From NCBI GenBank assembly GCA_053919585.1, contig CM132791.1: a stretch of 64,000 nt of DNA; one strand, 5' to 3'. This document shows, in pieces, positions 8,166 to 64,000 of the stretch. The first letter of the stretch is position 1. Every line of letters begins with the position of its first letter. Source of the DNA: Euprymna scolopes (lineage: Eukaryota). The notes beneath the pieces are model-generated. The model searched no databases, was not told the origin of the DNA, and was given only the letters and a program-made list of their open reading frames with translations. A program made the translations under genes and the position numbers.

Positions 8166-8170
<5 letters not shown>
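7347..8170 (-). mobile_element. Non-autonomous Helitron, copy 1
   Basis: Plus-strand 'a|ctagcggggtacccggcgttgtccg' is, on the minus strand, a GC-rich short hairpin then CTAG|T (Helitron 3' end). About 280 bp (7891-8170) is shared with copy 2; the 5' end runs into (TA)n. Confidence 0.75.
7600..7840. repeat. ~125-bp tandem duplication inside Helitron copy 1
   Basis: 'aaaatggcataaa.aacccttcga.tcg..taagtcca.tggtgcgtt.cacccagtagaaa...aacgttaaaattccattccagttttt' occurs at ~7602 and ~7727. Confidence 0.85.

Positions 8171-8230
<60 letters not shown>
8167..8230. repeat. (TA)n microsatellite
   Basis: Visible TA run. Confidence 0.95.
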
Positions 8231-12457: not shown

Positions 12458-12592
12458 NNNNNNNNNNNNNNNNNNNNNNNNNNNNNNNNNNNNNNNNNNN
12501 NNNNNNNNNNNNNNNNNNNNNNNNNNNNNNNNNNNNNNNNNNNNNNNNNNNNNNNNNNNNNNNNNNNNNNNNNNNNNNNNNNNNNNNNNNNN
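12458..12592. other. Assembly gap (135 N)
   Basis: Run of N. Confidence 0.99.

Positions 12593-25404: not shown

Positions 25405-25482
<78 letters not shown>
25405..25482. repeat. (TA)n microsatellite
   Basis: Visible TA run. Confidence 0.95.

Positions 25483-26067: not shown

Positions 26068-26130
<63 letters not shown>
26068..26130. repeat. (TA)n microsatellite
   Basis: Visible TA run. Confidence 0.95.
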
Positions 26131-38667: not shown

Positions 38668-38732
38668 CGGTTAAACTTTTGTTTACAGAATTTTATGAAA
38701 CCGGTAAAATTTAACTCCGTTTATTTCTTGAG

Positions 38733-41700
38733 AACCTTGGATACATATTATTAGAAATACATGATAAACCTTTAAAAACCTTGGATCAAATTATTAGAAA
38801 TACATGATAAACCTTTACAAACCTTGGATCAAATTATTAGAAATACATACCTTTAAAAACCTTGGATCAAATTATTAGAAATACATGATAAACCTTTAAA
38901 AACCTTGGATCAAATTATTAGAAATACATGATAAACCTTTAAAAACCTTGGATCAAATTATTAGAAATACATGATAAACCTTTAAAAACCTTGGATCAAA
39001 TTATTAGAAATACATGATAAACCTTTAAAAACCTTGGATCAAATTATTAGAAATACATGATAAACCTTTAAAAACCTTGGATCAAATTATTAGAAATACA
39101 TGATAAACCTTTAAAAACCTTGGATCAAATTATTAGAAATACATGATAAACCTTTAAAAACCTTGGATCAAATTATTAGAAATACATGATAAACCTTTAA
39201 AAACCTTGGATCAAATTATTAGAAATACATGATAAACCTTTAAAAACCTTGGATCAAATTATTAGAAATACATGATAAACCTTTAAAAACCTTGGATCAA
39301 ATTATTAGAAATACATGATAAACCTTTAAAAACCTTGGATCAAATTATTAGAAATACATGATAAACCTTTAAAAACCTTGGATCAAATTATTAGAAATAC
39401 ATGATAAACCTTTAAAAACCTTGGATCAAATTATTAGAAATACATGATAAACCTTTAAAAACCTTGGATCAAATTATTAGAAATACATGATAAACCTTTA
39501 AAAACCTTGGATCAAATTATTAGAAATACATGATAAACCTTTAAAAACCTTGGATCAAATTATTAGAAATACATGATAAACCTTTAAAAACCTTGGATCA
39601 AATTATTAGAAATACATGATAAACCTTTAAAAACCTTGGATCAAATTATTAGAAATACATGATAAACCTTTAAAAACCTTGGATCAAATTATTAGAAATA
39701 CATGATAAACCTTTAAAAACCTTGGATCAAATTATTAGAAATACATGATAAACCTTTAAAAACCTTGGATCAAATTATTAGAAATACATGATAAACCTTT
39801 AAAAACCTTGGATCAAATTATTAGAAATACATGATAAACCTTTAAAAACCTTGGATCAAATTATTAGAAATACATGATAAACCTTTAAAAACCTTGGATC
39901 AAATTATTAGAAATACATGATAAACCTTTAAAAACCTTGGATCAAATTATTAGAAATACATGATAAACCTTTAAAAACCTTGGATCAAATTATTAGAAAT
40001 ACATGATAAACCTTTAAAAACCTTGGATCAAATTATTAGAAATACATGATAAACATTTAAAAACCTTGGATCAAATTATTAGAAATACATGATAAACCTT
40101 TAAAAACCTTGGATCAAATTATTAGAAATACATGATAAACCTTTAAAAACCTTGGATCAAATTATTAGAAATACATGATAAACCTTTAAAAACCTTGGAT
40201 CAAATTATTAGAAATACATGATAAACCTTTAAAAACCTTGGATCAAATTATTAGAAATACATGATAAACCTTTAAAAACCTTGGATCAAATTATTAGAAA
40301 TACATGATAAACCTTTAAAAACCTTTGAACAAATTATTAGAAATACATGATAAACCTTTAAAAACCTTGGATCAAATTATTAGAAATACATGATAAACCT
40401 TTAAAAACCTTGGATCAAATTATTAGAAATACATGATAAACCTTTAAAAACCTTGGATCAAATTATTAGAAATACATGATAAACCTTTAAAAACCTTGGA
40501 TCAAATTATTAGAAATACATGATAAACCTTTAAAAACCTTGGATCAAATTATTAGAAATACATGATAAACCTTTAAAAACCTTGGATCAAATTATTAGAA
40601 ATACATGATAAACCTTTAAAAAACTTGGATCAAATTATTAGAAATACATGATAAACCTTTAAAAACCTTGGATCAAATTATTAGAAATACATGATAAACC
40701 TTTAAAAACCTTGGATCAAATTATTAGAAATACATGATAAACCTTTAAAAACCTTGGATCAAATTATTAGAAATACATGATAAACCTTTAAAAACCTTGG
40801 ATCAAATTATTAGAAATACATGATAAACCTTTAAAAATCTTGGATCAAATTATTAGAAATACATGATAAACCTTTAAAAACCTTGGATCAAATTATTAGA
40901 AATACATGATAAACCTTTAAAAACCTTGGATCAAATTATTAGAAATACATGATAAACCTTTAAAAACCTTGGATCAAATTATTAGAAATACATACCTTTA
41001 AAAACCTTGGATCAAATTATTAGAAATACATGATAAACCTTTAAAAACCTTGGATCAAATTATTAGAAATACATGATAAACCTTTAAAAACCTTGGATCA
41101 AATTATTAGAAATACATACCTTTAAAAACCTTGGATCAAATTATTAGAAATACATGATAAACCTTTAAAAACCTTGGATCAAATTATTAGAAATACATGA
41201 TAAACCTTTAAAAACCTTGGATCAAATTATTAGAAATACATGATAAACCTTTAAAAACCTTGGATCAAATTATTAGAAATACATGATAAACCTTTAAAAA
41301 CCTTGGATCAAATTATTAGAAATACATGATAAACCTTTAAAAACCTTGGATCAAATTATTAGAAATACATGATAAACCTTTAAAAACCTTGGATCAAATT
41401 ATTAGAAATACATGATAAACCTTTAAAAACCTTGGATCAAATTATTAGAAATACATGATAAACCTTTAAAAACCTTGGATCAAATTATTAGAAATACATG
41501 ATAAACCTTTAAAAACCTTGGATCAAATTATTAGAAATACATGATAAACCTTTAAAAACCTTGGATCAAATTATTAGAAATACATGATAAACCTTTAAAA
41601 ACCTTGGATCAAATTATTAGAAATACATACCTTTAAAAACCTTGGATCAAATTATTAGAAATACATGATAAACCTTTAAAAACCTTGGATCAAATTATTA

Positions 41701-44700
41701 GAAATACATGATAAACCTTTAAAAACCTTGGATCAAATTATTAGAAATACATGATAAACCTTTAAAAACCTTGGATCAAATTATTAGAAATACATGATAA
41801 ACCTTTAAAAACCTTGGATCAAATTATTAGAAATACATGATAAACCTTTAAAAACCTTGGATCAAATTATTAGAAATACATGATAAACCTTTAAAAACCT
41901 TGGATCAAATTATTAGAAATACATGATAAACCTTTAAAAACCTTGGATCAAATTATTAGAAATACATGATAAACCTTTAAAAACCTTGAATCAAATTATT
42001 AGAAATACATGATAAACCTTTAAAAACCTTGGATCAAATTATTAGAAATACATGATAAACCTTTAAAAACCTTTGACCAAATTATTAGAAATACATGATA
42101 AACCTTTAAAAACCTTGGATCAAATTATTAGAAATACATGATAAACCTTTAAAAACCTTGGATCAAATTATTAGAAATACATGATAAACCTTTAAAAACC
42201 TTGGATCAAATTATTAGAAATACATGATAAACCTTTAAAAACCTTGGATCAAATTATTAGAAATACATGATAAACCTTTAAAAACCTTGGATCAAATTAT
42301 TAGAAATACATGATAAACCTTTAAAAACCTTGGATCAAATTATTAGAAATACATGATAAACCTTTAAAAACCTTGGATCAAATTATTAGAAATACATGAT
42401 AAACCTTTAAAAACCTTGGATCAAATTATTAGAAATACATGATAAACCTTTAAAAACCTTGGATCAAATTATTAGAAATACATGATAAACCTTTAAAAAC
42501 CTTGGATCAAATTATTAGAAATACATGATAAACCTTTAAAAACCTTGGATCAAATTATTAGAAATACATGATAAACCTTTAAAAACCTTGGATCAAATTA
42601 TTAGAAATACATGATAAACCTTTAAAAACCTTGGATCAAATTATTAGAAATACATGATAAACCTTTAAAAACCTTGGATCAAATTATTAGAAATACATGA
42701 TAAACCTTTAAAAACCTTGGATCAAATTATTAGAAATACATGATAAACCTTTAAAAACCTTGGATCAAATTATTAGAAATACATGATAAACCTTTAAAAA
42801 CCTTGGATCAAATTATTAGAAATACATGATAAACCTTTAAAAACCTTGGATCAAATTATTAGAAATACATGATAAACCTTTAAAAACCTTGGATCAAATT
42901 ATTAGAAATACATGATAAACCTTTAAAAACCTTGGATCAAATTATTAGAAATACATGATAAACCTTTAAAAACCTTGGATCAAATTATTAGAAATACATG
43001 ATAAACCTTTAAAAACCTTGGATCAAATTATTAGAAATACATGATAAACCTTTAAAAACCTTGGATCAAATTATTAGAAATACATGATAAACCTTTAAAA
43101 ACCTTGGATCAAATTATTAGAAATACATGATAAACCTTTAAAAACCTTGGATCAAATTATTAGAAATACATGATAAACCTTTAAAAACCTTGGATCAAAT
43201 TATTAGAAATACATGATAAACCTTTAAAAACCTTGGATCAAATTATTAGAAATACATGATAAACCTTTAAAAACCTTGGATCAAATTATTAGAAATACAT
43301 GATAAACCTTTAAAAACCTTGGATCAAATTATTAGAAATACATGATAAACCTTTAAAAACCTTGAATCAAATTATTAGAAATACATGATAAACCTTTAAA
43401 AACCTTGGATCAAATTATTAGAAATACATGATAAACCTTTAAAAACCTTGGATCAAATTATTAGAAATACATGATAAACCTTTAAAAACCTTGGATCAAA
43501 TTATTAGAAATACATGATAAACCTTTAAAAACCTTGGATCAAATTATTAGAAATACATGATAAACCTTTAAAAACCTTGGATCAAATTATTAGAAATACA
43601 TGATAAACCTTTAAAAACCTTGGATAAAATTATTAGAAATACATGATAAACCTTTAAAAACCTTGGATCAAATTATTAGAAATACATGATAAACCTTTAA
43701 AAACCTTGGATCAAATTATTAGAAATACATGATAAACCTTTAAAAACCTTGGATCAAATTATTAGAAATACATGATAAACCTTTAAAAACCTTGGATCAA
43801 ATTATTAGAAATACATGATAAACCTTTAAAAACCTTGGATCAAATTATTAGAAATACATGATAAACCTTTAAAAACCTTGGATCAAATTATTAGAAATAC
43901 ATGATAAACCTTTAAAAACCTTGGATCAAATTATTAGAAATACATGATAAACCTTTAAAAACCTTGGATCAAATTATTAGAAATACATGATAAACCTTTA
44001 AAAACCTTGGATCAAATTATTAGAAATACATGATAAACCTTTAAAAACCTTGGATCAAATTATTAGAAATACATGATAAACCTTTAAAAACCTTGGATCA
44101 AATTATTAGAAATACATGATAAACCTTTAAAAACCTTGGATCAAATTATTAGAAATACATGATAAACCTTTAAAAACCTTGGATCAAATTATTAGAAATA
44201 CATGATAAACCTTTAAAAACCTTGGATCAAATTATTAGAAATACATGATAAACCTTTAAAAACCTTGGATCAAATTATTAGAAATACATGATAAACCTTT
44301 AAAAACCTTGGATCAAATTATTAGAAATACATGATAAACCTTTAAAAACCTTGGATCAAATTATTAGAAATACATGATAAACCTTTAAAAACCTTGGATC
44401 AAATTATTAGAAATACATGATAAACCTTTAAAAACCTTGGATCAAATTATTAGAAATACATGATAAACCTTTAAAAACCTTGGATCAAATTATTAGAAAT
44501 ACATGATAAACCTTTAAAAACCTTGGATCAAATTATTAGAAATACATGATAAACCTTTAAAAACCTTGGATCAAATTATTAGAAATACATGATAAACCTT
44601 TAAAAACCTTGGATCAAATTATTAGAAATACATGATAAACCTTTAAAAACCTTGGATCAAATTATTAGAAATACATGATAAACCTTTAAAAACCTTGGAT

Positions 44701-47700
44701 CAAATTATTAGAAATACATGATAAACCTTTAAAAACCTTGGATCAAATTATTAGAAATACATGATAAACCTTTAAAAACCTTGGATCAAATTATTAGAAA
44801 TACATGATAAACCTTTAAAAACCTTGGATCAAATTATTAGAAATACATGATAAACCTTTAAAAACCTTGGATCAAATTATTAGAAATACATGATAAACCT
44901 TTAAAAACCTTGGATCAAATTATTAGAAATACATGATAAACCTTTAAAAACCTTGGATCAAATTATTAGAAATACATGATAAACCTTTAAAAACCTTGGA
45001 TCAAATTATTAGAAATACATGATAAACCTTTAAAAACCTTGGATCAAATTATTAGAAATACATGATAAACCTTTAAAAACCTTGGATCAAATTATTAGAA
45101 ATACATGATAAACCTTTAAAAACCTTGGATCAAATTATTAGAAATACATGATAAACCTTTAAAAACCTTGGATCAAATTATTAGAAATACATGATAAACC
45201 TTTAAAAACCTTGGATCAAATTATTAGAAATACATGATAAACCTTTAAAAACCTTGGATCAAATTATTAGAAATACATGATAAACCTTTAAAAACCTTGG
45301 ATCAAATTATTAGAAATACATGATAAACCTTTAAAAACCTTGGATCAAATTATTAGAAATACATGATAAACCTTTAAAAACCTTGGATCAAATTATTAGA
45401 AATACATGATAAACCTTTAAAAACCTTGGATCAAATTATTAGAAATACATGATAAACCTTTAAAAACCTTGGATCAAATTATTAGAAATACATGATAAAC
45501 CTTTAAAAACCTTGGATCAAATTATTAGAAATACATGATAAACCTTTAAAAACCTTGGATCAAATTATTAGAAATACATGATAAACCTTTAAAAACCTTG
45601 GATCAAATTATTAGAAATACATGATAAACCTTTAAAAACCTTGGATCAAATTATTAGAAATACATGATAAACCTTTAAAAACCTTGGATCAAATTATTAG
45701 AAATACATGATAAACCTTTAAAAACCTTGGATCAAATTATTAGAAATACATGATAAACCTTTAAAAACCTTGGATCAAATTATTAGAAATACATGATAAA
45801 CCTTTAAAAACCTTGGATCAAATTATTAGAAATACATGATAAACCTTTAAAAACCTTGGATCAAATTATTAGAAATACATGATAAACCTTTAAAAACCTT
45901 GGATCAAATTATTAGAAATACATACCTTTAAAAACCTTGGATCAAATTATTAGAAATACATGATAAACCTTTAAAAACCTTGGATCAAATTATTAGAAAT
46001 ACATGATAAACCTTTAAAAACCTTGGATCAAATTATTAGAAATACATACCTTTAAAAACCTTGGATCAAATTATTAGAAATACATGATAAACCTTTAAAA
46101 ACCTTGGATCAAATTATTAGAAATACATGATAAACCTTTAAAAACCTTGGATCAAATTATTAGAAATACATGATAAACCTTTAAAAACCTTGGATCAAAT
46201 TATTAGAAATACATGATAAACCTTTAAAAACCTTGGATCAAATTATTAGAAATACATGATAAACCTTTAAAAACCTTGGATCAAATTATTAGAAATACAT
46301 GATAAACCTTTAAAAACCTTGGATCAAATTATTAGAAATACATGATAAACCTTTAAAAACCTTGGATCAAATTATTAGAAATACATGATAAACCTTTAAA
46401 AACCTTGGATCAAATTATTAGAAATACATGATAAACCTTTAAAAACCTTGGATCAAATTATTAGAAATACATGATAAACCTTTAAAAACCTTGGATCAAA
46501 TTATTAGAAATACATGATAAACCTTTAAAAACCTTGGATCAAATTATTAGAAATACATGATAAACCTTTAAAAACCTTGGATCAAATTATTAGAAATACA
46601 TGATAAACCTTTAAAAACCTTGGATCAAATTATTAGAAATACATGATAAACCTTTAAAAACCTTTGACCAAATTATTAGAAATACATGATAAACCTTTAA
46701 AAACCTTGGATCAAATTATTAGAAATACATGATAAACCTTTAAAAACCTTGGATCAAATTATTAGAAATACATGATAAACCTTTAAAAACCTTGGATCAA
46801 ATTATTAGAAATACATGATAAACCTTTAAAAACCTTGGATCAAATTATTAGAAATACATGATAAACCTTTAAAAACCTTGGATCAAATTATTAGAAATAC
46901 ATGATAAACCTTTAAAAACCTTGGATCAAATTATTAGAAATACATGATAAACCTTTAAAAACCTTGGATCAAATTATTAGAAATACATGATAAACCTTTA
47001 AAAACCTTGGATCAAATTATTAGAAATACATGATAAACCTTTAAAAACCTTGGATCAAATTATTAGAAATACATGATAAACCTTTAAAAACCTTGGATCA
47101 AATTATTAGAAATACATGATAAACCTTTAAAAACCTTGGATCAAATTATTAGAAATACATGATAAACCTTTAAAAACCTTGGATCAAATTATTAGAAATA
47201 CATGATAAACCTTTAAAAACCTTGGATCAAATTATTAGAAATACATGATAAACCTTTAAAAACCTTGGATCAAATTATTAGAAATACATGATAAACCTTT
47301 AAAAACCTTGGATCAAATTATTAGAAATACATGATAAACCTTTAAAAACCTTGAATCAAATTATTAGAAATACATGATAAACCTTTAAAAACCTTGGATC
47401 AAATTATTAGAAATACATGATAAACCTTTAAAAACCTTGGATCAAATTATTAGAAATACATGATAAACCTTTAAAAACCTTGGATCAAATTATTAGAAAT
47501 ACATGATAAACCTTTAAAAACCTTGGATCAAATTATTAGAAATACATGATAAACCTTTAAAAACCTTGGATCAAATTATTAGAAATACATGATAAACCTT
47601 TAAAAACCTTGGATCAAATTATTAGAAATACATGATAAACCTTTAAAAACCTTGGATCAAATTATTAGAAATACATGATAAACCTTTAAAAACCTTGGAT

Positions 47701-50700
47701 CAAATTATTAGAAATACATGATAAACCTTTAAAAACCTTGGATCAAATTATTAGAAATACATGATAAACCTTTAAAAACCTTGGATCAAATTATTAGAAA
47801 TACATGATAAACCTTTAAAAACCTTGGATCAAATTATTAGAAATACATGATAAACCTTTAAAAACCTTGGATCAAATTATTAGAAATACATGATAAACCT
47901 TTAAAAACCTTGGATCAAATTATTAGAAATACATGATAAACCTTTAAAAACCTTGGATCAAATTATTAGAAATACATGATAAACCTTTAAAAACCTTGGA
48001 TCAAATTATTAGAAATACATGATAAACCTTTAAAAACCTTGGATCAAATTATTAGAAATACATGATAAACCTTTAAAAACCTTGGATCAAATTATTAGAA
48101 ATACATGATAAACCTTTAAAAACCTTGGATCAAATTATTAGAAATACATGATAAACCTTTAAAAACCTTGGATCAAATTATTAGAAATACATGATAAACC
48201 TTTAAAAACCTTGGATCAAATTATTAGAAATACATGATAAACCTTTAAAAACCTTGGATCAAATTATTAGAAATACATGATAAACCTTTAAAAACCTTGG
48301 ATCAAATTATTAGAAATACATGATAAACCTTTAAAAACCTTGGATCAAATTATTAGAAATACATACCTTTAAAAACCTTGGATCAAATTATTAGAAATAC
48401 ATGATAAACCTTTAAAAACCTTGGATCAAATTATTAGAAATACATGATAAACCTTTAAAAACCTTGGATCAAATTATTAGAAATACATAACCTTTAAAAA
48501 CCTTGGATCAAATTATTAGAAATACATGATAAACCTTTAAAAAACTTGGATCAAATTATTAGAAATACATGATAAACCTTTAAAAACCTTGGATCAAATT
48601 ATTAGAAATACATGATAAACCTTTAAAAACCTTGGATCAAATTATTAGAAATACATGATAAACCTTTAAAAACCTTGGATCAAATTATTAGAAATACATG
48701 ATAAACCTTTAAAAACCTTGGATCAAATTATTAGAAATACATGATAAACCTTTAAAAATCTTGGATCAAATTATTAGAAATACATGATAAACCTTTAAAA
48801 ACCTTGGATCAAATTATTAGAAATACATGATAAACCTTTAAAAACCTTGGATCAAATTATTAGAAATACATGATAAACCTTTAAAAACCTTGGATCAAAT
48901 TATTAGAAATACATACCTTTAAAAACCTTGGATCAAATTATTAGAAATACATGATAAACCTTTAAAAACCTTGGATCAAATTATTAGAAATACATGATAA
49001 ACCTTTAAAAACCTTGGATCAAATTATTAGAAATACATACCTTTAAAAACCTTGGATCAAATTATTAGAAATACATGATAAACCTTTAAAAACCTTTGAC
49101 CAAATTATTAGAAATACATGATAAACCTTTAAAAACCTTGGATCAAATTATTAGAAATACATGATAAACCTTTAAAAACCTTGGATCAAATTATTAGAAA
49201 TACATGATAAACCTTTAAAAACCTTGGATCAAATTATTAGAAATACATGATAAACCTTTAAAAACCTTGGATCAAATTATTAGAAATACATGATAAACCT
49301 TTAAAAACCTTGGATCAAATTATTAGAAATACATGATAAACCTTTAAAAACCTTGGATCAAATTATTAGAAATACATGATAAACCTTTAAAAACCTTGGA
49401 TCAAATTATTAGAAATACATGATAAACCTTTAAAAACCTTGGATCAAATTATTAGAAATACATGATAAACCTTTAAAAACCTTGGATCAAATTATTAGAA
49501 ATACATGATAAACCTTTAAAAACCTTGGATCAAATTATTAGAAATACATGATAAACCTTTAAAAACCTTGGATCAAATTATTAGAAATACATGATAAACC
49601 TTTAAAAACCTTGGATCAAATTATTAGAAATACATGATAAACCTTTAAAAACCTTGGATCAAATTATTAGAAATACATGATAAACCTTTAAAAACCTTGG
49701 ATCAAATTATTAGAAATACATGATAAACCTTTAAAAACCTTGGATCAAATTATTAGAAATACATGATAAACCTTTAAAAACCTTGGATCAAATTATTAGA
49801 AATACATGATAAACCTTTAAAAACCTTGGATCAAATTATTAGAAATACATGATAAACCTTTAAAAACCTTGGATCAAATTATTAGAAATACATGATAAAC
49901 CTTTAAAAACCTTGGATCAAATTATTAGAAATACATGATAAACCTTTAAAAACCTTGGATCAAATTATTAGAAATACATGATAAACCTTTAAAAACCTTG
50001 GATCAAATTATTAGAAATACATGATAAACCTTTAAAAACCTTGGATCAAATTATTAGAAATACATGATAAACCTTTAAAAACCTTGGATCAAATTATTAG
50101 AAATACATGATAAACCTTTAAAAACCTTGGATCAAATTATTAGAAATACATGATAAACCTTTAAAAACCTTGGATCAAATTATTAGAAATACATGATAAA
50201 CCTTTAAAAACCTTGGATCAAATTATTAGAAATACATGATAAACCTTTAAAAACCTTGGATCAAATTATTAGAAATACATGATAAACCTTTAAAAACCTT
50301 GGATCAAATTATTAGAAATACATGATAAACCTTTAAAAACCTTGGATCAAATTATTAGAAATACATGATAAACCTTTAAAAACCTGTGACCAAATTATTA
50401 GAAATACATGATAAACCTTTAAAAACCTTGGATCAAATTATTAGAAATACATGATAAACCTTTAAAAACCTTGGATCAAATTATTAGAAATACATGATAA
50501 ACCTTTAAAAACCTTGGATCAAATTATTAGAAATACATGATAAACCTTTAAAAACCTTGGATCAAATTATTAGAAATACATGATAAACCTTTAAAAACCT
50601 TGGATCAAATTATTAGAAATACATGATAAACCTTTAAAAACCTTGGATCAAATTATTAGAAATACATGATAAACCTTTAAAAACCTTGGATCAAATTATT

Positions 50701-53700
50701 AGAAATACATGATAAACCTTTAAAAACCTTGGATCAAATTATTAGAAATACATGATAAACCTTTAAAAACCTTGGATCAAATTATTAGAAATACATGATA
50801 AACCTTTAAAAACCTTGGATCAAATTATTAGAAATACATGATAAACCTTTAAAAACCTTTGACCAAATTATTAGAAATACATGATAAACCTTTAAAAACC
50901 TTGGATCAAATTATTAGAAATACATGATAAACCTTTAAAAACCTTGGATCAAATTATTAGAAATACATGATAAACCTTTAAAAACCTTGGATCAAATTAT
51001 TAGAAATACATGATAAACCTTTAAAAACCTTGGATCAAATTATTAGAAATACATGATAAACCTTTAAAAACCTTGGATCAAATTATTAGAAATACATGAT
51101 AAACCTTTAAAAACCTTGGATCAAATTATTAGAAATACATGATAAACCTTTAAAAACCTTGGATCAAATTATTAGAAATACATGATAAACCTTTAAAAAC
51201 CTTGGATCAAATTATTAGAAATACATGATAAACCTTTAAAAACCTTGGATCAAATTATTAGAAATACATGATAAACCTTTAAAAACCTTGGATCAAATTA
51301 TTAGAAATACATGATAAACCTTTAAAAACCTTGGATCAAATTATTAGAAATACATGATAAACCTTTAAAAACCTTGGATCAAATTATTAGAAATACATGA
51401 TAAACCTTTAAAAACCTTGGATCAAATTATTAGAAATACATGATAAACCTTTAAAAACCTTGGATCAAATTATTAGAAATACATGATAAACCTTTAAAAA
51501 CCTTGGATCAAATTATTAGAAATACATGATAAACCTTTAAAAACCTTGGATCAAATTATTAGAAATACATGATAAACCTTTAAAAACCTTGGATCAAATT
51601 ATTAGAAATACATGATAAACCTTTAAAAACCTTGGATCAAATTATTAGAAATACATGATAAACCTTTAAAAACCTTGGATCAAATTATTAGAAATACATG
51701 ATAAACCTTTAAAAACCTTGGATCAAATTATTAGAAATACATGATAAACCTTTAAAAACCTTGGATCAAATTATTAGAAATACATGATAAACCTTTAAAA
51801 ACCTTGGATCAAATTATTAGAAATACATGATAAACCTTTAAAAACCTTGGATCAAATTATTAGAAATACATGATAAACCTTTAAAAACCTTGGATCAAAT
51901 TATTAGAAATACATGATAAACCTTTAAAAACCTTGGATCAAATTATTAGAAATACATGATAAACCTTTAAAAACCTTGGATCAAATTATTAGAAATACAT
52001 GATAAACCTTTAAAAACCTTGGATAAAATTATTAGAAATACATGATAAACCTTTAAAAACCTTGGATCAAATTATTAGAAATACATGATAAACCTTTAAA
52101 AACCTTGGATAAAATTATTAGAAATACATGATAAACCTTTAAAAACCTTGGATCAAATTATTAGAAATACATGATAAACCTTTAAAAACCTTGGATCAAA
52201 TTATTAGAAATACATGATAAACCTTTAAAAACCTTGGATCAAATTATTAGAAATACATGATAAACCTTTAAAAACCTTGGATCAAATTATTAGAAATACA
52301 TGATAAACCTTTAAAAACCTTGNNNNNNNNNNNNNNNNNNNNNNNNNNNNNNNNNNNNNNNNNNNNNNNNNNNNNNNNNNNNNNNNNNNNNNNNNNNNNN
52401 NNNNNNNNNNNNNNNNNNNNNNAAAACCTTGGATCAAATTATTAGAAATACATGATAAACCTTTAAAAACCTTGGATCAAATTATTAGAAATACATGATA
52501 AACCTTTAAAAACCTTGGATCAAATTATTAGAAATACATGATAAACCTTTAAAAACCTTGGATCAAATTATTAGAAATACATGATAAACCTTTAAAAACC
52601 TTGGATCAAATTATTAGAAATACATGATAAACCTTTAAAAACCTTGGATCAAATTATTAGAAATACATGATAAACCTTTAAAAACCTTGGATCAAATTAT
52701 TAGAAATACATGATAAACCTTTAAAAACCTTGGATCAAATTATTAGAAATACATGATAAACCTTTAAAAACCTTGGATCAAATTATTAGAAATACATGAT
52801 AAACCTTTAAAAACCTTGGATCAAATTATTAGAAATACATGATAAACCTTTAAAAACCTTGGATCAAATTATTAGAAATACATGATAAACCTTTAAAAAC
52901 CTTGGATCAAATTATTAGAAATACATGATAAACCTTTAAAAACCTTGGATCAAATTATTAGAAATACATGATAAACCTTTAAAAACCTTGGATCAAATTA
53001 TTAGAAATACATGATAAACCTTTAAAAACCTTGGATCAAATTATTAGAAATACATGATAAACCTTTAAAAACCTTGGATCAAATTATTAGAAATACATGA
53101 TAAACCTTTAAAAACCTTGGATCAAATTATTAGAAATACATGATAAACCTTTAAAAACCTTGGATCAAATTATTAGAAATACATGATAAACCTTTAAAAA
53201 CCTTGGATCAAATTATTAGAAATACATGATAAACCTTTAAAAACCTTGGATCAAATTATTAGAAATACATGATAAACCTTTAAAAAACCTTGGATCAAAT
53301 TATTAGAAATACATGATAAACCTTTAAAAACCTTGGATCAAATTATTAGAAATACATGATAAACCTTTAAAAACCTTGGATCAAATTATTAGAAATACAT
53401 GATAAACCTTTAAAAACCTTGGATCAAATTATTAGAAATACATGATAAACCTTTAAAAACCTTGGATCAAATTATTAGAAATACATGATAAACCTTTAAA
53501 AACCTTGGATCAAATTATTAGAAATACATGATAAACATTTAAAAACCTTGGATCAAATTATTAGAAATACATGATAAACCTTTAAAAACCTTGGATCAAA
53601 TTATTAGAAATACATGATAAACCTTTAAAAACCTTGGATCAAATTATTAGAAATACATGATAAACCTTTAAAAACCTTGGATCAAATTATTAGAAATACA

Positions 53701-56700
53701 TGATAAACCTTTAAAAACCTTGGATCAAATTATTAGAAATACATGATAAACCTTTAAAAACCTTGGATCAAATTATTAGAAATACATGATAAACCTTTAA
53801 AAACCTTGGATCAAATTATTAGAAATACATGATAAACCTTTAAAAACCTTGGATCAAATTATTAGAAATACATGATAAACCTTTAAAAACCTTGGATCAA
53901 ATTATTAGAAATACATGATAAACCTTTAAAAACCTTGGATCAAATTATTAGAAATACATGATAAACCTTTAAAAACCTTGGATCAAATTATTAGAAATAC
54001 ATGATAAACCTTTAAAAACCTTGGATCAAATTATTAGAAATACATGATAAACCTTTAAAAACCTTGGATCAAAATTATTAGAAATACATGATAAACCTTT
54101 AAAAACCTTGGATCAAATTATTAGAAATACATGATAAACCTTTAAAAACCTTGGATCAAATTATTAGAAATACATGATAAACCTTTAAAAACCTTGGATC
54201 AAATTATTAGAAATACATGATAAACCTTTAAAAACCTTGGATCAAATTATTAGAAATACATGATAAACCTTTAAAAACCTTGGATCAAATTATTAGAAAT
54301 ACATGATAAACCTTTAAAAACCTTGGATAAAATTATTAGAAATACATGATAAACCTTTAAAAACCTTGGATCAAATTATTAGAAATACATGATAAACCTT
54401 TAAAAACCTTGGATCAAATTATTAGAAATACATGATAAACCTTTAAAAACCTTGGATCAAATTATTAGAAATACATGATAAACCTTTAAAAACCTTGGAT
54501 CAAATTATTAGAAATACATGATAAACCTTTAAAAACCTTGGATCAAATTATTAGAAATACATGATAAACCTTTAAAAACCTTGGATCAAATTATTAGAAA
54601 TACATGATAAACCTTTAAAAACCTTGGATCAAATTATTAGAAATACATGATAAACCTTTAAAAACCTTGGATCAAATTATTAGAAATACATGATAAACCT
54701 TTAAAAACCTTGGATCAAATTATTAGAAATACATGATAAACCTTTAAAAACCTTGGATCAAATTATTAGAAATACATGATAAACCTTTAAAAACCTTGGA
54801 TCAAATTATTAGAAATACATGATAAACCTTTAAAAACCTTGGATCAAATTATTAGAAATACATGATAAACCTTTAAAAACTTGGATCAAATTATTAGAAA
54901 TACATGATAAACCTTTAAAAACCTTGGATCAAATTATTAGAAATACATGATAAACCTTTAAAAACCTTGGATCAAATTATTAGAAATACATGATAAACCT
55001 TTAAAAACCTTGGATCAAATTATTAGAAATACATGATAAACCTTTAAAAACCTTGGATCAAATTATTAGAAATACATGATAAACCTTTAAAAACCTTGGA
55101 TCAAATTATTAGAAATACATGATAAACCTTTAAAAACCTTGGATCAAATTATTAGAAATACATGATAAACCTTTAAAAACCTTGGATCAAATTATTAGAA
55201 ATACATGATAAACCTTTAAAAACCTTGGATCAAATTATTAGAAATACATGATAAACCTTTAAAAACCTTGGATCAAATTATTAGAAATACATGATAAACC
55301 TTTAAAAACCTTGGATCAAATTATTAGAAATACATGATAAACCTTTAAAAACCTTGGATCAAATTATTAGAAATACATGATAAACCTTTAAAAACCTTGG
55401 ATCAAATTATTAGAAATACATGATAAACCTTTAAAAACCTTGGATCAAATTATTAGAAATACATGATAAACCTTTAAAAACCTTGGATCAAATTATTAGA
55501 AATACATGATAAACCTTTAAAAACCTTGGATCAAATTATTAGAAATACATGATAAACCTTTAAAAACCTTGGATCAAATTATTAGAAATACATGATAAAC
55601 CTTTAAAAACCTTGGATCAAATTATTAGAAATACATGATAAACCTTTAAAAACCTTGGATCAAATTATTAGAAATACATGATAAACCTTTAAAAACCTTG
55701 GATCAAATTATTAGAAATACATGATAAACCTTTAAAAACCTTGGATCAAATTATTAGAAATACATGATAAACCTTTAAAAACCTTGGATCAAATTATTAG
55801 AAATACATGATAAACCTTTAAAAACCTTTGACCAAATTATTAGAAATACATGATAAACCTTTAAAAACCTTGGACTCAAATTATTAGAAATACATGATAA
55901 ACCTTTAAAAACCTTGGATCAAATTATTAGAAATACATGATAAACCTTTAAAAACCTTGGATCAAATTATTAGAAATACATACCTTTAAAAACCTTGGAT
56001 CAAATTATTAGAAATACATGATAAACCTTTAAAAACCTTGGATCAAATTATTAGAAATACATGATAAACCTTTAAAAACCTTGGATCAAATTATTAGAAA
56101 TACATGATAAACCTTTAAAAACCTTGGATCAAATTATTAGAAATACATGATAAACCTTTAAAAACCTTGGATCAAATTATTAGAAATACATGATAAACCT
56201 TTAAAAACCTTGGATCAAATTATTAGAAATACATGATAAACCTTTAAAAACCTTGGATCAAATTATTAGAAATACATGATAAACCTTTAAAAACCTTGGA
56301 TCAAATTATTAGAAATACATGATAAACCTTTAAAAACCTTGGATCAAATTATTAGAAATACATGATAAACCTTTAAAAACCTTGGATCAAATTATTAGAA
56401 ATACATGATAAACCTTTAAAAACCTTGGATCAAATTATTAGAAATACATGATAAACCTTTAAAAACCTTGGATCAAATTATTAGAAATACATGATAAACC
56501 TTTAAAAACCTTGGATCAAATTATTAGAAATACATGATAAACCTTTAAAAACCTTGGATCAAATTATTAGAAATACATGATAAACCTTTAAAAACCTTGG
56601 ATCAAATTATTAGAAATACATGATAAACCTTTAAAAACCTTGGATCAAATTATTAGAAATACATGATAAACCTTTAAAAACCTTGGATCAAATTATTAGA

Positions 56701-59700
56701 AATACATGATAAACCTTTAAAAACCTTGGATCAAATTATTAGAAATACATGATAAACCTTTAAAAACCTTTGACCAAATTATTAGAAATACATGATAAAC
56801 CTTTAAAAACCTTGGATAAAATTATTAGAAATACATGATAAACCTTTAAAAACCTTGGATCAAATTATTAGAAATACATGATAAACCTTAAAAAACCTTG
56901 GATCAAATTATTAGAAATACATGATAAACCTTTAAAAACCTTGGATCAAATTATTAGAAATACATGATAAACCTTTAAAAACCTTGGATCAAATTATTAG
57001 AAATACATGATAAACCTTTAAAAACCTTGGATCAAATTATTAGAAATACATGATAAACCTTTAAAAACCTTGGATCAAATTATTAGAAATACATGATAAA
57101 CCTTTAAAAACCTTGGATCAAATTATTAGAAATACATGATAAACCTTTAAAAACCTTGGATCAAATTATTAGAAATACATGATAAACCTTTAAAAACCTT
57201 GGATCAAATTATTAGAAATACATGATAAACCTTTAAAAACCTTGGATCAAATTATTAGAAATACATGATAAACCTTTAAAAACCTTGGATCAAATTATTA
57301 GAAATACATGATAAACCTTTAAAAACCTTGGATCAAATTATTAGAAATACATGATAAACCTTTAAAAACCTTGGATCAAATTATTAGAAATACATGATAA
57401 ACCTTTAAAAACCTTGGATCAAATTATTAGAAATACATGATAAACCTTTAAAAACCTTTGACCAAATTATTAGAAATACATGATAAACCTTTAAAAACCT
57501 TGGATCAAATTATTAGAAATACATGATAAACCTTTAAAAACCTTGGATCAAATTATTAGAAATACATGATAAACCTTTAAAAACCTTGGATCAAATTATT
57601 AGAAATACATGATAAACCTTTAAAAACCTTGGATCAAATTATTAGAAATACATGATAAACCTTTAAAAACCTTGGATCAAATTATTAGAAATACATGATA
57701 AACCTTTAAAAACCTTGGATCAAATTATTAGAAATACATGATAAACCTTTAAAAACCTTGGATCAAATTATTAGAAATACATGATAAACCTTTAAAAACC
57801 TTGGATCAAATTATTAGAAATACATGATAAACCTTTAAAAACCTTGGATCAAATTATTAGAAATACATGATAAACCTTTAAAAACCTTGGATCAAATTAT
57901 TAGAAATACATGATAAACCTTTAAAAACCTTGGATCAAATTATTAGAAATACATGATAAACCTTTAAAAACCTTGGATCAAATTATTAGAAATACATGAT
58001 AAACCTTTAAAAACCTTGGATCAAATTATTAGAAATACATGATAAACCTTTAAAAACCTTGGATCAAATTATTAGAAATACATGATAAACCTTTAAAAAC
58101 CTTGGATCAAATTATTAGAAATACATGATAAACCTTTAAAAACCTTGGATCAAATTATTAGAAATACATGATAAACCTTTAAAAACCTTGGATCAAATTA
58201 TTAGAAATACATGATAAACCTTTAAAAACCTTGGATCAAATTATTAGAAATACATGATAAACCTTTAAAAACCTTGGATCAAATTATTAGAAATACATGA
58301 TAAACCTTTAAAAACCTTGGATCAAATTATTAGAAATACATGATAAACCTTTAAAAACCTTGGATCAAATTATTAGAAATACATGATAAACCTTTAAAAA
58401 CCTGTGACCAAATTATTAGAAATACATGATAAACCTTTAAAAACCTTGGATCAAATTATTAGAAATACATGATAAACCTTTAAAAACCTTGGATCAAATT
58501 ATTAGAAATACATGATAAACCTTTAAAAACCTTGGATCAAATTATTAGAAATACATGATAAACCTTTAAAAACCTTGGATCAAATTATTAGAAATACATG
58601 ATAAACCTTTAAAAACCTTGGATCAAATTATTAGAAATACATGATAAACCTTTAAAAACCTTGGATCAAATTATTAGAAATACATGATAAACCTTTAAAA
58701 ACCTTGGATCAAATTATTAGAAATACATGATAAACCTTTAAAAACCTTTGACCAAATTATTAGAAATACATGATAAACCTTTAAAAACCTTGGACCAAAT
58801 TATTAGAAATACATGATAAACCTTTAAAAACCTTGGATCAAATTATTAGAAATACATGATAAACCTTTAAAAACCTTGGATCAAATTATTAGAAATACAT
58901 GATAAACCTTTAAAAACCTTGGATCAAATTATTAGAAATACATGATAAACCTTTAAAAACCTTGGATCAAATTATTAGAAATACATGATAAACCTTTAAA
59001 AACCTTGGATCAAATTATTAGAAATACATGATAAACCTTTAAAAACCTTGGATCAAATTATTAGAAATACATGATAAACCTTTAAAAACCTTTGACCAAA
59101 TTATTAGAAATACATGATAAACCTTTAAAAACCTTGGATCAAATTATTAGAAATACATGATAAACCTTTAAAAACCTTGGATCAAATTATTAGAAATACA
59201 TGATAAACCTTTAAAAACCTTGGATCAAATTATTAGAAATACATGATAAACCTTTAAAAACCTTGGATCAAATTATTAGAAATACATGATAAACCTTTAA
59301 AAACCTTGGATCAAATTATTAGAAATACATGATAAACCTTTAAAAACCTTGGATCAAATTATTAGAAATACATGATAAACCTTTAAAAACCTTGGATCAA
59401 ATTATTAGAAATACATGATAAACCTTTAAAAACCTTGGATCAAATTATTAGAAATACATGATAAACCTTTAAAAACCTTGGATCAAATTATTAGAAATAC
59501 ATGATAAACCTTTAAAAACCTTGGATCAAATTATTAGAAATACATGATAAACCTTTAAAAACCTTGGATCAAATTATTAGAAATACATGATAAACCTTTA
59601 AAAACCTTGGATCAAATTATTAGAAATACATGATAAACCTTTAAAAACCTTGGATCAAATTATTAGAAATACATGATAAACCTTTAAAAACCTTGGATCA

Positions 59701-62700
59701 AATTATTAGAAATACATGATAAACCTTTAAAAACCTTGGATCAAATTATTAGAAATACATGATAAACCTTTAAAAACCTTGGATCAAATTATTAGAAATA
59801 CATGATAAACCTTTAAAAACCTTGGATCAAATTATTAGAAATACATGATAAACCTTTAAAAACCTTGGATCAAATTATTAGAAATACATGATAAACCTTT
59901 AAAAACCTTGGATCAAATTATTAGAAATACATGATAAACCTTTAAAAACCTTGGATCAAATTATTAGAAATACATGATAAACCTTTAAAAACCTTGGATC
60001 AAATTATTAGAAATACATGATAAACCTTTAAAAACCTTGGATCAAATTATTAGAAATACATGATAAACCTTTAAAAACCTGTGACCAAATTATTAGAAAT
60101 ACATGATAAACCTTTAAAAACCTTGGATCAAATTATTAGAAATACATGATAAACCTTTAAAAACCTTGGATCAAATTATTAGAAATACATGATAAACCTT
60201 TAAAAACCTTGGATCAAATTATTAGAAATACATGATAAACCTTTAAAAACCTTGGATCAAATTATTAGAAATACATGATAAACCTTTAAAAACCTTGGAT
60301 CAAATTATTAGAAATACATGATAAACCTTTAAAAACCTTGGATCAAATTATTAGAAATACATGATAAACCTTTAAAAACCTTGGATCAAATTATTAGAAA
60401 TACATGATAAACCTTTAAAAACCTTGGATCAAATTATTAGAAATACATGATAAACCTTTAAAAACCTTGGATCAAATTATTAGAAATACATGATAAACCT
60501 TTAAAAACCTTGGATCAAATTATTAGAAATACATGATAAACCTTTAAAAACCTTGGATCAAATTATTAGAAATACATGATAAACCTTTAAAAACCTTGGA
60601 TCAAATTATTAGAAATACATGATAAACCTTTAAAAACCTGTGACCAAATTATTAGAAATACATGATAAACCTTTAAAAACCTTGGATCAAATTATTAGAA
60701 ATACATGATAAACCTTTAAAAACCTTGGATCAAATTATTAGAAATACATGATAAACCTTTAAAAACCTTGGATCAAATTATTAGAAATACATGATAAACC
60801 TTTAAAAACCTTGGATCAAATTATTAGAAATACATGATAAACCTTTAAAAACCTTGGATCAAATTATTAGAAATACATGATAAACCTTTAAAAACCTTGG
60901 ATCAAATTATTAGAAATACATGATAAACCTTTAAAAACCTTGGATCAAATTATTAGAAATACATGATAAACCTTTAAAAACCTTGGATCAAATTATTAGA
61001 AATACATGATAAACCTTTAAAAACCTTGGATCAAATTATTAGAAATACATGATAAACCTTTAAAAACCTTGGATCAAATTATTAGAAATACATGATAAAC
61101 CTTTAAAAACCTTGGATCAAATTATTAGAAATACATGATAAACCTTTAAAAACCTTGGATCAAATTATTAGAAATACATGATAAACCTTTAAAAACCTTG
61201 GATCAAATTATTAGAAATACATGATAAACCTTTAAAAACCTTGGATCAAATTATTAGAAATACATGATAAACCTTTAAAAACCTTGGATCAAATTATTAG
61301 AAATACATGATAAACCTTTAAAAACCTTGGATCAAATTATTAGAAATACATGATAAACCTTTAAAAACCTTGGATCAAATTATTAGAAATACATGATAAA
61401 CCTTTAAAAACCTGTGACCAAATTATTAGAAATACATGATAAACCTTTAAAAACCTTGGATCAAATTATTAGAAATACATGATAAACCTTTAAAAACCTT
61501 GGATCAAATTATTAGAAATACATGATAAACCTTTAAAAACCTTGGATCAAATTATTAGAAATACATGATAAACCTTTAAAAACCTTGGATCAAATTATTA
61601 GAAATACATGATAAACCTTTAAAAACCTTGGATCAAATTATTAGAAATACATGATAAACCTTTAAAAACCTTGGATCAAATTATTAGAAATACATGATAA
61701 ACCTTTAAAAACCTTGGATCAAATTATTAGAAATACATGATAAACCTTTAAAAACCTTGGATCAAATTATTAGAAATACATGATAAACCTTTAAAAACCT
61801 TGGATCAAATTATTAGAAATACATGATAAACCTTTAAAAACCTTGGATCAAATTATTAGAAATACATGATAAACCTTTAAAAACCTTGGATCAAATTATT
61901 AGAAATACATGATAAACCTTTAAAAACCTTGGATCAAATTATTAGAAATACATGATAAACCTTTAAAAACCTTGGATCAAATTATTAGAAATACATGATA
62001 AACCTTTAAAAACCTTGGATCAAATTATTAGAAATACATGATAAACCTTTAAAAACCTTTGACCAAATTATTAGAAATACATGATAAACCTTTAAAAACC
62101 TTGGATCAAATTATTAGAAATACATGATAAACCTTTAAAAACCTTGGATCAAATTATTAGAAATACATGATAAACCTTTAAAAACCTTGGATCAAATTAT
62201 TAGAAATACATGATAAACCTTTAAAAACCTTGGATCAAATTATTAGAAATACATGATAAACCTTTAAAAACCTTGGATCAAATTATTAGAAATACATGAT
62301 AAACCTTTAAAAACCTTGGATCAAATTATTAGAAATACATGATAAACCTTTAAAAACCTTGGATCAAATTATTAGAAATACATGATAAACCTTTAAAAAC
62401 CTTGGATCAAATTATTAGAAATACATGATAAACCTTTAAAAACCTTGGATCAAATTATTAGAAATACATGATAAACCTTTAAAAACCTTGGATAAAATTA
62501 TTAGAAATACATGATAAACCTTTAAAAACCTTGGATCAAATTATTAGAAATACATGATAAACCTTTAAAAACCTTGGATCAAATTATTAGAAATACATGA
62601 TAAACCTTTAAAAACCTTGGATCAAATTATTAGAAATACATGATAAACCTTTAAAAACCTTGGATCAAATTATTAGAAATACATGATAAACCTTTAAAAA

Positions 62701-64000
62701 CCTTGGATCAAATTATTAGAAATACATGATAAACCTTTAAAAACCTTGGATCAAATTATTAGAAATACATGATAAACCTTTAAAAACCTTGGATCAAATT
62801 ATTAGAAATACATGATAAACCTTTAAAAACCTTGGATCAAATTATTAGAAATACATGATAAACCTTTAAAAACCTTGGATCAAATTATTAGAAATACATG
62901 ATAAACCTTTAAAAACCTTGGATCAAATTATTAGAAATACATGATAAACCTTTAAAAACCTTGGATCAAATTATTAGAAATACATGATAAACCTTTAAAA
63001 ACCTTGGATCAAATTATTAGAAATACATGATAAACCTTTAAAAACCTGTGACCAAATTATTAGAAATACATGATAAACCTTTAAAAACCTTGGATCAAAT
63101 TATTAGAAATACATGATAAACCTTTAAAAACCTTGGATCAAATTATTAGAAATACATGATAAACCTTTAAAAACCTTGGATCAAATTATTAGAAATACAT
63201 GATAAACCTTTAAAAACCTTGGATCAAATTATTAGAAATACATGATAAACCTTTAAAAACCTTGGATCAAATTATTAGAAATACATGATAAACCTTTAAA
63301 AACCTTGGATCAAATTATTAGAAATACATGATAAACCTTTAAAAACCTTGGATCAAATTATTAGAAATACATGATAAACCTTTAAAAACCTTGGATCAAA
63401 TTATTAGAAATACATGATAAACCTTTAAAAACCTTGGATCAAATTATTAGAAATACATGATAAACCTTTAAAAACCTTGGATCAAATTATTAGAAATACA
63501 TGATAAACCTTTAAAAACCTTGGATCAAATTATTAGAAATACATGATAAACCTTTAAAAACCTTGGATCAAATTATTAGAAATACATGATAAACCTTTAA
63601 AAACCTTGGATCAAATTATTAGAAATACATGATAAACCTTTAAAAACCTTGGATCAAATTATTAGAAATACATGATAAACCTTTAAAAACCTTGGATCAA
63701 ATTATTAGAAATACATGATAAACCTTTAAAAACCTTTGACCAAATTATTAGAAATACATGATAAACCTTTAAAAACCTTGGACCAAATTATTAGAAATAC
63801 ATGATAAACCTTTAAAAACCTTGGATCAAATTATTAGAAATACATGATAAACCTTTAAAAACCTTGGATCAAATTATTAGAAATACATACCTTTAAAAAC
63901 CTTGGATCAAATTATTAGAAATACATGATAAACCTTTAAAAACCTTGGATCAAATTATTAGAAATACATGATAAACCTTTAAAAACCTTGGATCAAATTA
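38733..64000. repeat. 43-bp satellite DNA array (>=25 kb, ~585 monomers, runs off the window end)
   Basis: Monomer CCTTGGATCAAATTATTAGAAATACATGATAAACCTTTAAAAA (43 bp, 10/43 GC), head-to-tail in the same orientation on both sides of the gap. Most copies are identical. Confidence 0.99.
52323..52422. other. Assembly gap (100 N, probably an unsized placeholder)
   Basis: Exactly 100 N inside the satellite. Confidence 0.99.

What the first reader, a model, noticed from the sequence alone, without database searches (positions are those of the whole stretch)
38733..64000. Very homogeneous >=25-kb 43-bp satellite: candidate centromeric/heterochromatic array
Seen: ~585 head-to-tail copies, of which I could spot only a few dozen variants by eye. 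There are no TE insertions across 25 kb, although the adjacent 38 kb is saturated with decayed elements. The array contains an unsized gap and runs off the window, so it is larger than shown. Inference: a young or actively homogenised array that contrasts sharply with the old flank, as at a satellite-block or centromere edge. Function is not shown by the sequence.
Basis: partly seen in the sequence, partly recalled or inferred. Interest (0 to 1): 0.7.

Follow-up and report, generated by a model that had tools for sequence, protein, structure and literature searches.

The report
Single-locus 43-bp tandem array
This is a real, very uniform run of about 605 copies of a 43-base unit, but it occurs at only one place in a 5.9-billion-base animal genome and has ordinary DNA on both sides, so it reads as a recently expanded local repeat and nothing marks it as a centromere.

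Summary
From window 38733 a 43-bp unit repeats head to tail. There are 605 whole units, 550 of them identical, at 0.5% mean distance from the consensus. Nothing interrupts the array except a 100-N gap at 52323-52422.

The array runs only 797 bp past the window. It then ends sharply in unique DNA, followed by dispersed repeats. It is therefore a 26-kb island, not the edge of a satellite block.

A whole-assembly pattern search found 583 near-exact units. That equals the count at this locus exactly, so the monomer exists nowhere else in 5.9 Gb and 925 contigs.

The locus lies 149.0 Mb along a 169.65-Mb chromosome-scale contig. The unit has no CpG, no hairpin potential, no open frame and no Rfam match. 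No poly(A) RNA reads landed on it.

Recurring multi-unit variant patterns, including a 12-unit block copied 7,921 bp away, point to growth by unequal exchange.

Register is not kept across the gap, and the two sides can overlap by at most four units. The true size is therefore at least about 601 units and otherwise unknown.

The centromere or heterochromatin part is not. Earlier notes of this scan report several similar one-locus arrays elsewhere in this genome.

The parts
38733..52322 (+). Left part of the 43-bp array: 317 whole units (13,583 bp) plus 7 bases of the next unit. The first three units are variants: a 44-bp unit, a unit with 1 mismatch, and a 38-bp unit.
52323..52422 (.). Assembly gap of 100 N inside the array. 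Register is not kept and the size is unknown. It was not filled or looked up.
52423..64000 (+). Right part of the array. There are 288 whole units (12,371 bp) when the 797 bp beyond the window are included (L011:1-797). The array ends sharply in unique DNA.
38636..38732 (.). A 97-bp unique spacer between the end of a dispersed repeat and the first unit. It has no other copy in the genome and no monomer-like relic.
38000..38635 (.). Copy of a very abundant dispersed repeat, about 81% identical to its relatives. Most relatives end at the same point, so this is its natural terminus and it was not cut by the array.
   Evidence: heavy contig depth
40621..41126 (+). A 12-unit block with the variant pattern G....H..A..A: two rare single-base variants and two 38-bp units.
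48542..49047 (+). Second copy of the same 12-unit block, 185 units (7,921 bp) downstream. This is evidence of multi-unit duplication inside the array.
22500..24283 (+). Broken non-LTR retrotransposon in the flank, with endonuclease and reverse-transcriptase pieces. It is context only.
   Evidence: PF14529 6.8e-14; PF00078 6.3e-26

Best explanation
This is a non-coding, locus-specific tandem array: a very long minisatellite, or a 'private' low-copy satellite. It arose where it sits, in a short stretch of unique DNA between two old dispersed repeats. It expanded recently to at least about 600 units. Shown: its structure, its uniformity, its single location, its two sharp borders, and multi-unit patterns that recur within it. 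Inferred: a 43-bp segment that already contained an internal 10-bp-spaced AAACCTT duplication was first duplicated by replication slippage. The array then grew, and stays uniform, through unequal sister-chromatid or homologue exchange and gene conversion in registers of one to a few hundred units. That process copies variant units and blocks around the array. Its four A-tracts per 43 bp (mean spacing 10.75 bp) are roughly in phase with the DNA helix, so the DNA may be intrinsically bent, as in many satellites. No sequence-specific function is indicated. Most likely it is neutral and length-polymorphic.
For: The array and its uniformity are shown. Both borders were read. The left border is at 38733. 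The right border is at L011:797, followed by non-repeat sequence. For single-locus status, 583 units with 2 or fewer mismatches were found in the whole 5.9-Gb assembly, against 0 for the reversed control. This equals 565 in the window plus 18 in L011. The 24-base core with 3 or fewer mismatches gives 601 forward and 10 reverse hits genome-wide, of which 592 forward are at this locus. The reversed control gives 30 and 12. So there is no excess elsewhere, including in unplaced contigs. The flanks are unique for 97 bp on the left and about 160 bp on the right. They hold no degenerate units (scores lie within shuffles). Block-wise growth is indicated in three ways. The pattern G....H..A..A recurs at +185 units, and G and H occur only twice each in the array. 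The 124-bp module A..A recurs three times, plus two near-variants (A..M and A...A). A stepwise variant lineage, consensus > I > B > D, is spread at 8-23-unit spacing. Nothing suggests a product or structure: no Rfam match at E<=1, single-strand DNA folding weaker than every shuffle with z = +2.15, a longest stop-free run of 24 codons and no CpG. No reads from two poly(A) RNA-seq runs fell on the array or the spacer. The satellite is present in an independent sample of the same species as a 73-nt unitig (43+30, as a k=31 cyclic unitig would be) identical to the consensus (run X1).
Against: The gap hides an unknown number of units. Each side of it holds 12-14 kb of array, about what long accurate reads anchored in a flank could reach, so the real array may be larger. 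Same-type variants are not significantly clustered by a nearest-neighbour test (p 0.4-0.7), so short-range conversion alone does not describe the pattern. Substitutions avoid the 25-bp AT-rich core of the unit (P about 5e-4 before correction for post-hoc choice, about 0.02 after). A purely neutral picture does not predict this. Chromatin state, copy-number variation and presence in related species were not testable here.
Confidence: 0.8

Rival explanations
1. It is the centromeric or pericentromeric satellite of this chromosome, specific to that chromosome. Most of the array would then be hidden in the assembly gap.
For: The array is AT-rich (23% G+C), highly homogenised and free of insertions, with roughly helically phased A-tracts. 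An unsized gap lies inside it. No centromeric satellite of cephalopods or close relatives could be found in the searchable literature, so there is nothing to compare it with.
Against: The monomer occurs at one locus only, and no unplaced contig carries it. Both borders are ordinary dispersed-repeat DNA only 26 kb apart. There is no dyad symmetry and no CpG, so no CENP-B-box-like motif. The genome holds very many other distinct AT-rich arrays on many chromosomes, several per chromosome, including another on this contig at 22.8 Mb. An array of this kind is therefore not a centromere marker. In a low-coverage run the consensus unitig had word depth 29. The tool warns that this is not a copy number, so it is no evidence for a megabase-sized array either.
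Confidence: 0.05
2. It is the visible rim of a much larger heterochromatic satellite block, hundreds of kilobases or more, collapsed at the gap and without centromere function.
For: Both contigs stop inside the array after 13.6 and 12.4 kb, which is typical of assemblers that cannot traverse near-identical repeats.
Against: No satellite-only contigs exist among the 925 contigs. The variant make-up differs only mildly between the two sides. The only depth figure obtained is modest, but it is not a valid copy number.
Confidence: 0.1
3. It is an assembly artefact: the array is over-expanded, or two haplotype versions of a shorter array were joined end to end at the gap.
For: There is a scaffold gap within near-identical repeats. 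Register is not kept across it.
Against: Each side is anchored in a different unique flank and neither side reaches the other flank. The two sides cannot overlap by more than 4 units without conflict. The monomer is multi-copy in an independent run of the same species.
Confidence: 0.04
4. It is a satellite born from, or carried by, a transposable element, as in oyster Helentron-borne arrays.
For: The array lies between two abundant dispersed repeats. Earlier notes of this scan report element-derived arrays elsewhere in this genome.
Against: No other copy of the monomer or of the adjoining 97-bp and roughly 160-bp flanks exists in the genome. The left repeat ends at its family's usual terminus 97 bp before the array. 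The flanks hold no monomer relics.
Confidence: 0.03

Closest known systems
Minisatellites / VNTR loci (units of about 10-100 bp, single locus, arrays up to tens of kb)
   Same: The unit length (43 bp), the single chromosomal locus, head-to-tail order, interspersed variant units and signs of unequal exchange all match.
   Different: At 26 kb or more, the array is at or above the usual upper size. It is AT-rich with no G-rich core, unlike classical hypervariable human minisatellites. Length polymorphism was not tested.
Low-copy or euchromatic satellite DNAs described by satellitome surveys (review PMC10048060; Pacific oyster PMC8268682, PMC7492417)
   Same: It is an AT-rich non-coding tandem repeat lying among transposable elements in a chromosome arm. 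The review states that satellite DNAs are common outside heterochromatin and that array length, abundance and location vary independently.
   Different: The oyster families are scattered over many loci, often as short arrays inside Helentron or other elements. This unit occurs once, as one long array, and no carrier element is detectable.
Centromeric satellites (for example primate alpha satellite)
   Same: It shares tandem order, AT-richness, high homogeneity and multi-unit duplicated patterns.
   Different: Those form arrays of hundreds of kilobases to megabases with regular higher-order repeats at every or most centromeres. Here there is one 26-kb island with irregular variant spacing, no shared family on other chromosomes and no centromere evidence.
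Other one-locus arrays noted by this scan in the same genome (units of 29, 30, 51 and 84 bp; 27-86 kb)
   Same: They share the same genome, the same size class, single-locus occurrence and high uniformity.
   Different: The unit sequences are unrelated. Some of those arrays show founding relics or an origin in an element, and this one shows neither. Those notes are unchecked AI notes and were not tested here.

Membership tests
Centromeric satellite | Occupies the site of kinetochore assembly (CENP-A/CenH3 chromatin, primary constriction) | not testable with these tools
   No chromatin or cytological data could be reached.
Centromeric satellite | Very long array (hundreds of kb to Mb), or the dominant array of its chromosome | tested here: inconclusive
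   The assembled span is 26,065 bp with both borders seen. An unsized gap lies inside it. No satellite-only contigs exist elsewhere.
Centromeric satellite | Same or related family at the centromeres of other chromosomes | tested here: not met
   All 583 near-exact units are at this locus, and core hits elsewhere are at or below the control. The 70-72% look-alikes on C45 and C14 are no better than the generic similarity seen among AT-rich arrays.
Centromeric satellite | Protein-binding box (CENP-B-box type) or dyad symmetry / non-B DNA potential | tested here: not met
   There is no CpG in the unit. Single-strand DNA folding gives -1.7 kcal/mol, weaker than all 200 shuffles, z = +2.15.
Minisatellite / VNTR | Unit of about 10-100 bp repeated head to tail | tested here: met
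   The unit is 43 bp and there are 605 units.
Minisatellite / VNTR | Confined to one locus with unique flanks | tested here: met
Minisatellite / VNTR | Array length varies between individuals | not testable with these tools
   Only low-coverage contig sets of other samples were available. The tool's own warning says their depths are not copy numbers.
Classical satellite DNA | High copy number and an appreciable share of the genome, in heterochromatin | tested here: not met
   26 kb of 5.9 Gb is about 0.0004% of the assembly. Chromatin state is unknown.
Transposon-borne or transposon-derived tandem array | Monomer or array-plus-flank present in dispersed element copies, or array bounded by element termini | tested here: not met
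Telomeric / subtelomeric repeat | Lies at or next to a chromosome end | tested here: not met
   The locus is at 149.02-149.05 Mb of a 169.65-Mb contig, about 20.6 Mb from the nearer end.
Structured or catalytic RNA repeat (for example hammerhead-bearing satellites) | Match to a known RNA family, or a stable conserved fold | tested here: not met
   There is no Rfam match at E<=1 and no stable fold.

The most novel reading that the evidence does not exclude
The array is the visible part of a chromosome-specific centromeric or heterochromatic satellite in a mollusc whose centromere DNA is undescribed. The substitution-free 25-bp AT-rich core (unit positions 12-36) would be a protein-binding element kept by selection, and most of the array would be hidden in the gap.
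Probability: 0.04. Interest if true: 0.6.

Novelty: new member of a known kind. Interest (0 to 1): 0.17.

Why it matters
Taken alone it matters little. It is one more private tandem array, useful at most as a chromosome-9 FISH or VNTR marker and as a flag for an unresolved assembly gap. Its wider value lies in the pattern. My reciprocal searches show dozens of distinct AT-rich arrays on many chromosomes. Earlier unchecked notes of this scan report several other one-locus arrays of 27-86 kb in this genome. A genome-wide census of such arrays could show whether this lineage is unusually prone to local repeat expansion. It could also show whether any subset marks centromeres, which appear undescribed for this group in the literature I could search.

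Tried and rejected
(1) Founding relics at the edges. Local alignment of both flanks to the unit on both strands scored within shuffled controls, so this was rejected.

(2) Origin in a transposable element. Neither the monomer nor its immediate flanks have another copy, so this was rejected.

(3) A satellite superfamily sharing the core AATTATTAG(A/G)AATACAT..GAT with a 25-bp array on C45 and a 21-bp array on C14. Unit shuffles looked significant. However, the hits were selected from 5.9 Gb, and each of those arrays itself gets dozens of 67-77% matches to other arrays on many chromosomes. The similarity is therefore not distinguishable from generic AT-rich resemblance, and I make no claim.

(4) Regular higher-order repeat. 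Variant spacing is irregular, and only one offset (185 units) stands out.

(5) Local clustering of same-type variants. It was not significant.

(6) Copy number from public runs. Only low-coverage Logan contigs were available for DNA, and the depth ratios between the two runs vary 0.3-14-fold across the flank. No copy number was derived.

(7) Wider context of +-200 kb.

(8) Pfam on the transposase-like remnant right of the array (L011:1419-1865). There was no match, so 'mariner-like' remains a resemblance from memory only.

(9) Literature on cephalopod or squid centromeric satellites. Nothing relevant was found.

The organism was not identified here. 'Mollusc, probably squid' comes from earlier notes and is untested.
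Full report
**The observation**

Tandem Repeats Finder reports a single array at window 38733-64000 with period 43, 588.4 copies and 98% matches. The consensus unit is AACCTTGGATCAAATTATTAGAAATACATGATAAACCTTTAAA. G+C falls from 0.29-0.43 in the flank to a flat 0.23 in the array.

I fetched the next 10 kb of the contig. The array continues for only 797 bp, to G000:C9:149050797, and then stops abruptly. Parsing window plus extension unit by unit gives 605 whole units. Of these, 550 are identical to the consensus and 55 are variants of 18 types. The summed edit distance to the consensus is 131 over 25,954 bases, or 0.5%. It is 0.31% if each deletion counts as one event.

No stretch between exact units exceeds 129 bp, and each such stretch is a variant unit. 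The array therefore holds no foreign insertion.

**The gap**

The 100 N lie at 52323-52422. The left side stops after base 7 of a unit, and the right side resumes with the last two bases of a unit. 7+100+2 = 109 = 2x43+23, so the placeholder does not keep register. Continuity across the gap cannot be shown.

Comparing variant patterns, the last units on the left can coincide with the first units on the right for at most 4 units without conflict. So at least about 601 units are distinct. The two sides hold 13,583 and 12,371 bp of array. That is about what long accurate reads anchored in a flank might reach. This is inference, and it means the real array may be longer.

**Where else the unit occurs**

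The window is G000:C9:148986001-149050000, on a 169.65-Mb contig of a 5.9-Gb assembly with 925 contigs.

- A pattern search of the whole assembly with up to 2 mismatches finds 583 forward and 0 reverse matches, against 0 and 0 for the reversed control.
- The window holds 565 such units. The remaining 18 (17 exact plus one near-exact) fall in the 797-bp extension (L011), so the locus accounts for the genome-wide 583.
- A looser search with a 24-base core and up to 3 mismatches gives 601 forward and 10 reverse matches, against 30 and 12 for the control. Of these, 592 forward matches are at this locus.

Nothing above background exists elsewhere, including in unplaced contigs. The satellite is a single-locus sequence and makes up about 0.0004% of the assembly.

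**The borders**

On the left, window 38000-38635 belongs to a very abundant dispersed repeat, with more than 11,000 first-look candidates at about 81% identity. Most copies end at the same point, so this is its natural terminus. The next 97 bp, 38636-38732, have no other copy in the genome.

On the right, about 160 bp are unique. A second dispersed family follows (979 candidates, about 75% identity), and then a third (7,432 candidates, about 82%) that carries transposase-like remnants. Pfam does not recognise those remnants.

Neither flank contains a degenerate unit, since alignment scores lie within shuffled controls. Further left there is a broken LINE with endonuclease and reverse-transcriptase pieces at 22500-24283.

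The array is therefore an island in ordinary, old, repeat-rich DNA. It is not the edge of a block.

**Inner structure**

The commonest variant, with 12 units, is a 38-bp unit lacking GATAA. Next come TTTGACC (11 units), GGATAAAA (6) and TGTGACC (6). A stepwise lineage is visible: consensus TTGGATC, then TTGGACC (2 units), then TTTGACC (11), then TGTGACC (6).

Multi-unit patterns recur. The module made of a 38-mer, two consensus units and a 38-mer (124 bp) occurs three times, with two near-variants. The 12-unit pattern G....H..A..A at 40621-41126 recurs at 48542-49047, exactly 185 units or 7,921 bp away. Its two single-base variants occur nowhere else in the array.

Same-type variants are not clustered by a nearest-neighbour test, and there is no regular higher-order period. 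The first three units at the left edge are all variants, while the right edge is consensus up to the last unit. This is the pattern expected from repeated unequal exchange and conversion in changing registers. That mechanism is inferred from established knowledge of tandem-repeat dynamics and was not observed here.

**Properties of the unit**

- It has no CpG and one GATC. A-runs start at positions 12, 22, 33 and 41, a mean spacing of 10.75 bp, roughly in phase with the helix. Any resulting curvature is an inference.
- AAACCTT occurs twice, about 10 bp apart.
- The longest stop-free run in any frame of the tandem consensus is 24 codons.
- There is no Rfam match at E<=1.
- Three units folded as single-stranded DNA give -1.7 kcal/mol, weaker than all 200 shuffles, z = +2.15. 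There is therefore no dyad symmetry.

**Public runs**

Eight runs from four studies hold a small share of the sampled words of the junction region. The organism is coded. I laid four runs on window 38100-38990.

- The dispersed repeat is covered very heavily.
- The unique spacer is not covered in the two low-coverage contig sets.
- Run X1, whose library type is not on record, contains a 73-nt contig identical to the consensus at word depth 28.9. The length 43+30 is what a cyclic k=31 unitig of a 43-bp tandem would give.
- Run X3 touches the array weakly.
- Two poly(A) RNA-seq runs, with 1.8 and 1.4 billion letters read, put no read on the array or the spacer.

So the unit exists as a multi-copy sequence in another sample of the species, and there is no sign of polyadenylated transcripts. 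The depths are not copy numbers, as the tool itself warns. The depth ratio between the two contig sets varies 0.3-14-fold along the flank, so I derive no array size from them.

**Look-alikes**

A BLAST-type search with four units found 70-72% matches only to a 25-bp array on C45 and a 21-bp array on C14. Their units share AATTATTAG(A/G)AATACAT..GAT with the core of the 43-mer. Reciprocal searches show that each of those arrays gets dozens of 67-77% matches to other arrays on many chromosomes. The resemblance is therefore not distinguishable from generic similarity among AT-rich arrays, and I do not claim kinship.

These searches also show that the genome carries many distinct short-unit arrays, several per chromosome. 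One of them is on this contig at 22.8 Mb. This further weakens the use of such an array as a centromere marker.

Earlier notes of this scan (unchecked AI notes) describe other one-locus arrays of 27-86 kb in the same genome. They call the organism a mollusc, probably a squid. I did not test either statement.

**An unexplained detail**

About 12 independent substitution events can be inferred. Eleven fall at unit positions 3-11 or 37-42. Only one, in the edge unit, falls in the 25-bp core at positions 12-36. The binomial P is 5e-4, and roughly 0.02 after allowing for the post-hoc choice of window. Base composition explains part of it. The signal is too thin to support a claim of constraint.

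**Comparison with known kinds**

By unit length, single locus and variant interspersion, the array is a very long minisatellite. By size and uniformity it also resembles the low-copy, non-heterochromatic satellite DNAs that satellitome surveys now report widely (PMC10048060, PMC8268682, PMC7492417). Unlike the oyster cases, it is not scattered and has no detectable carrier element.

It fails the testable features of a centromeric satellite. The family is not shared among chromosomes, there is no dyad symmetry or binding box, and no long array is shown. The defining feature, centromeric chromatin, cannot be tested here. It lies 20.6 Mb from the nearer contig end, so it is not subtelomeric.

**Verdict**

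The 'young or homogenised' reading is supported. The centromere or heterochromatin reading is unsupported, though the unsized gap keeps it from being strictly excluded. This is a new member of a known kind and of low interest by itself.

Noticed in passing
L011:2316-3637 (G000:C9:149052316-149053637): A second tandem array lies 1.5 kb to the right of the 43-bp array: about 83 copies of the 16-bp unit TTTTGGAATGTCCATG at 91% matches. It creates long spurious ORFs in all frames.
   Followed up: no
window 38733-64000, unit positions 12-36: Substitution events avoid the 25-bp AT-rich core of the unit (1 of about 12 events; P 5e-4 uncorrected, about 0.02 corrected). Most recurrent variants alter the GGATC at positions 7-11.
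   Followed up: partly
L029 (G000:C45:28.232-28.238 Mb) and L030 (G000:C14:55.029-55.036 Mb): There is a 25-bp array and a 21-bp array, each at least 6 kb long and 90-91% uniform. Each has dozens of weak (67-77%) look-alike arrays on many chromosomes. The genome seems unusually rich in distinct AT-rich short-unit arrays.
   Followed up: partly
window 12458-12592: A second run of N in the flank is 135 bases long, not the conventional 100.
   Followed up: no
window 38000-38635: This dispersed repeat next to the array has two stop-free stretches on the minus strand (113 and 102 codons) with no Pfam match. Short conserved segments of it reach enormous summed contig depth in public runs and attract RNA reads that continue into unlike sequence. 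That suggests a very abundant, partly expressed family.
   Followed up: no
window 8168-8230, 25405-25482, 26068-26130 and others: There are many perfect (TA)n / (AT)n microsatellites of 30-40 repeats in the flank and in L012.
   Followed up: no
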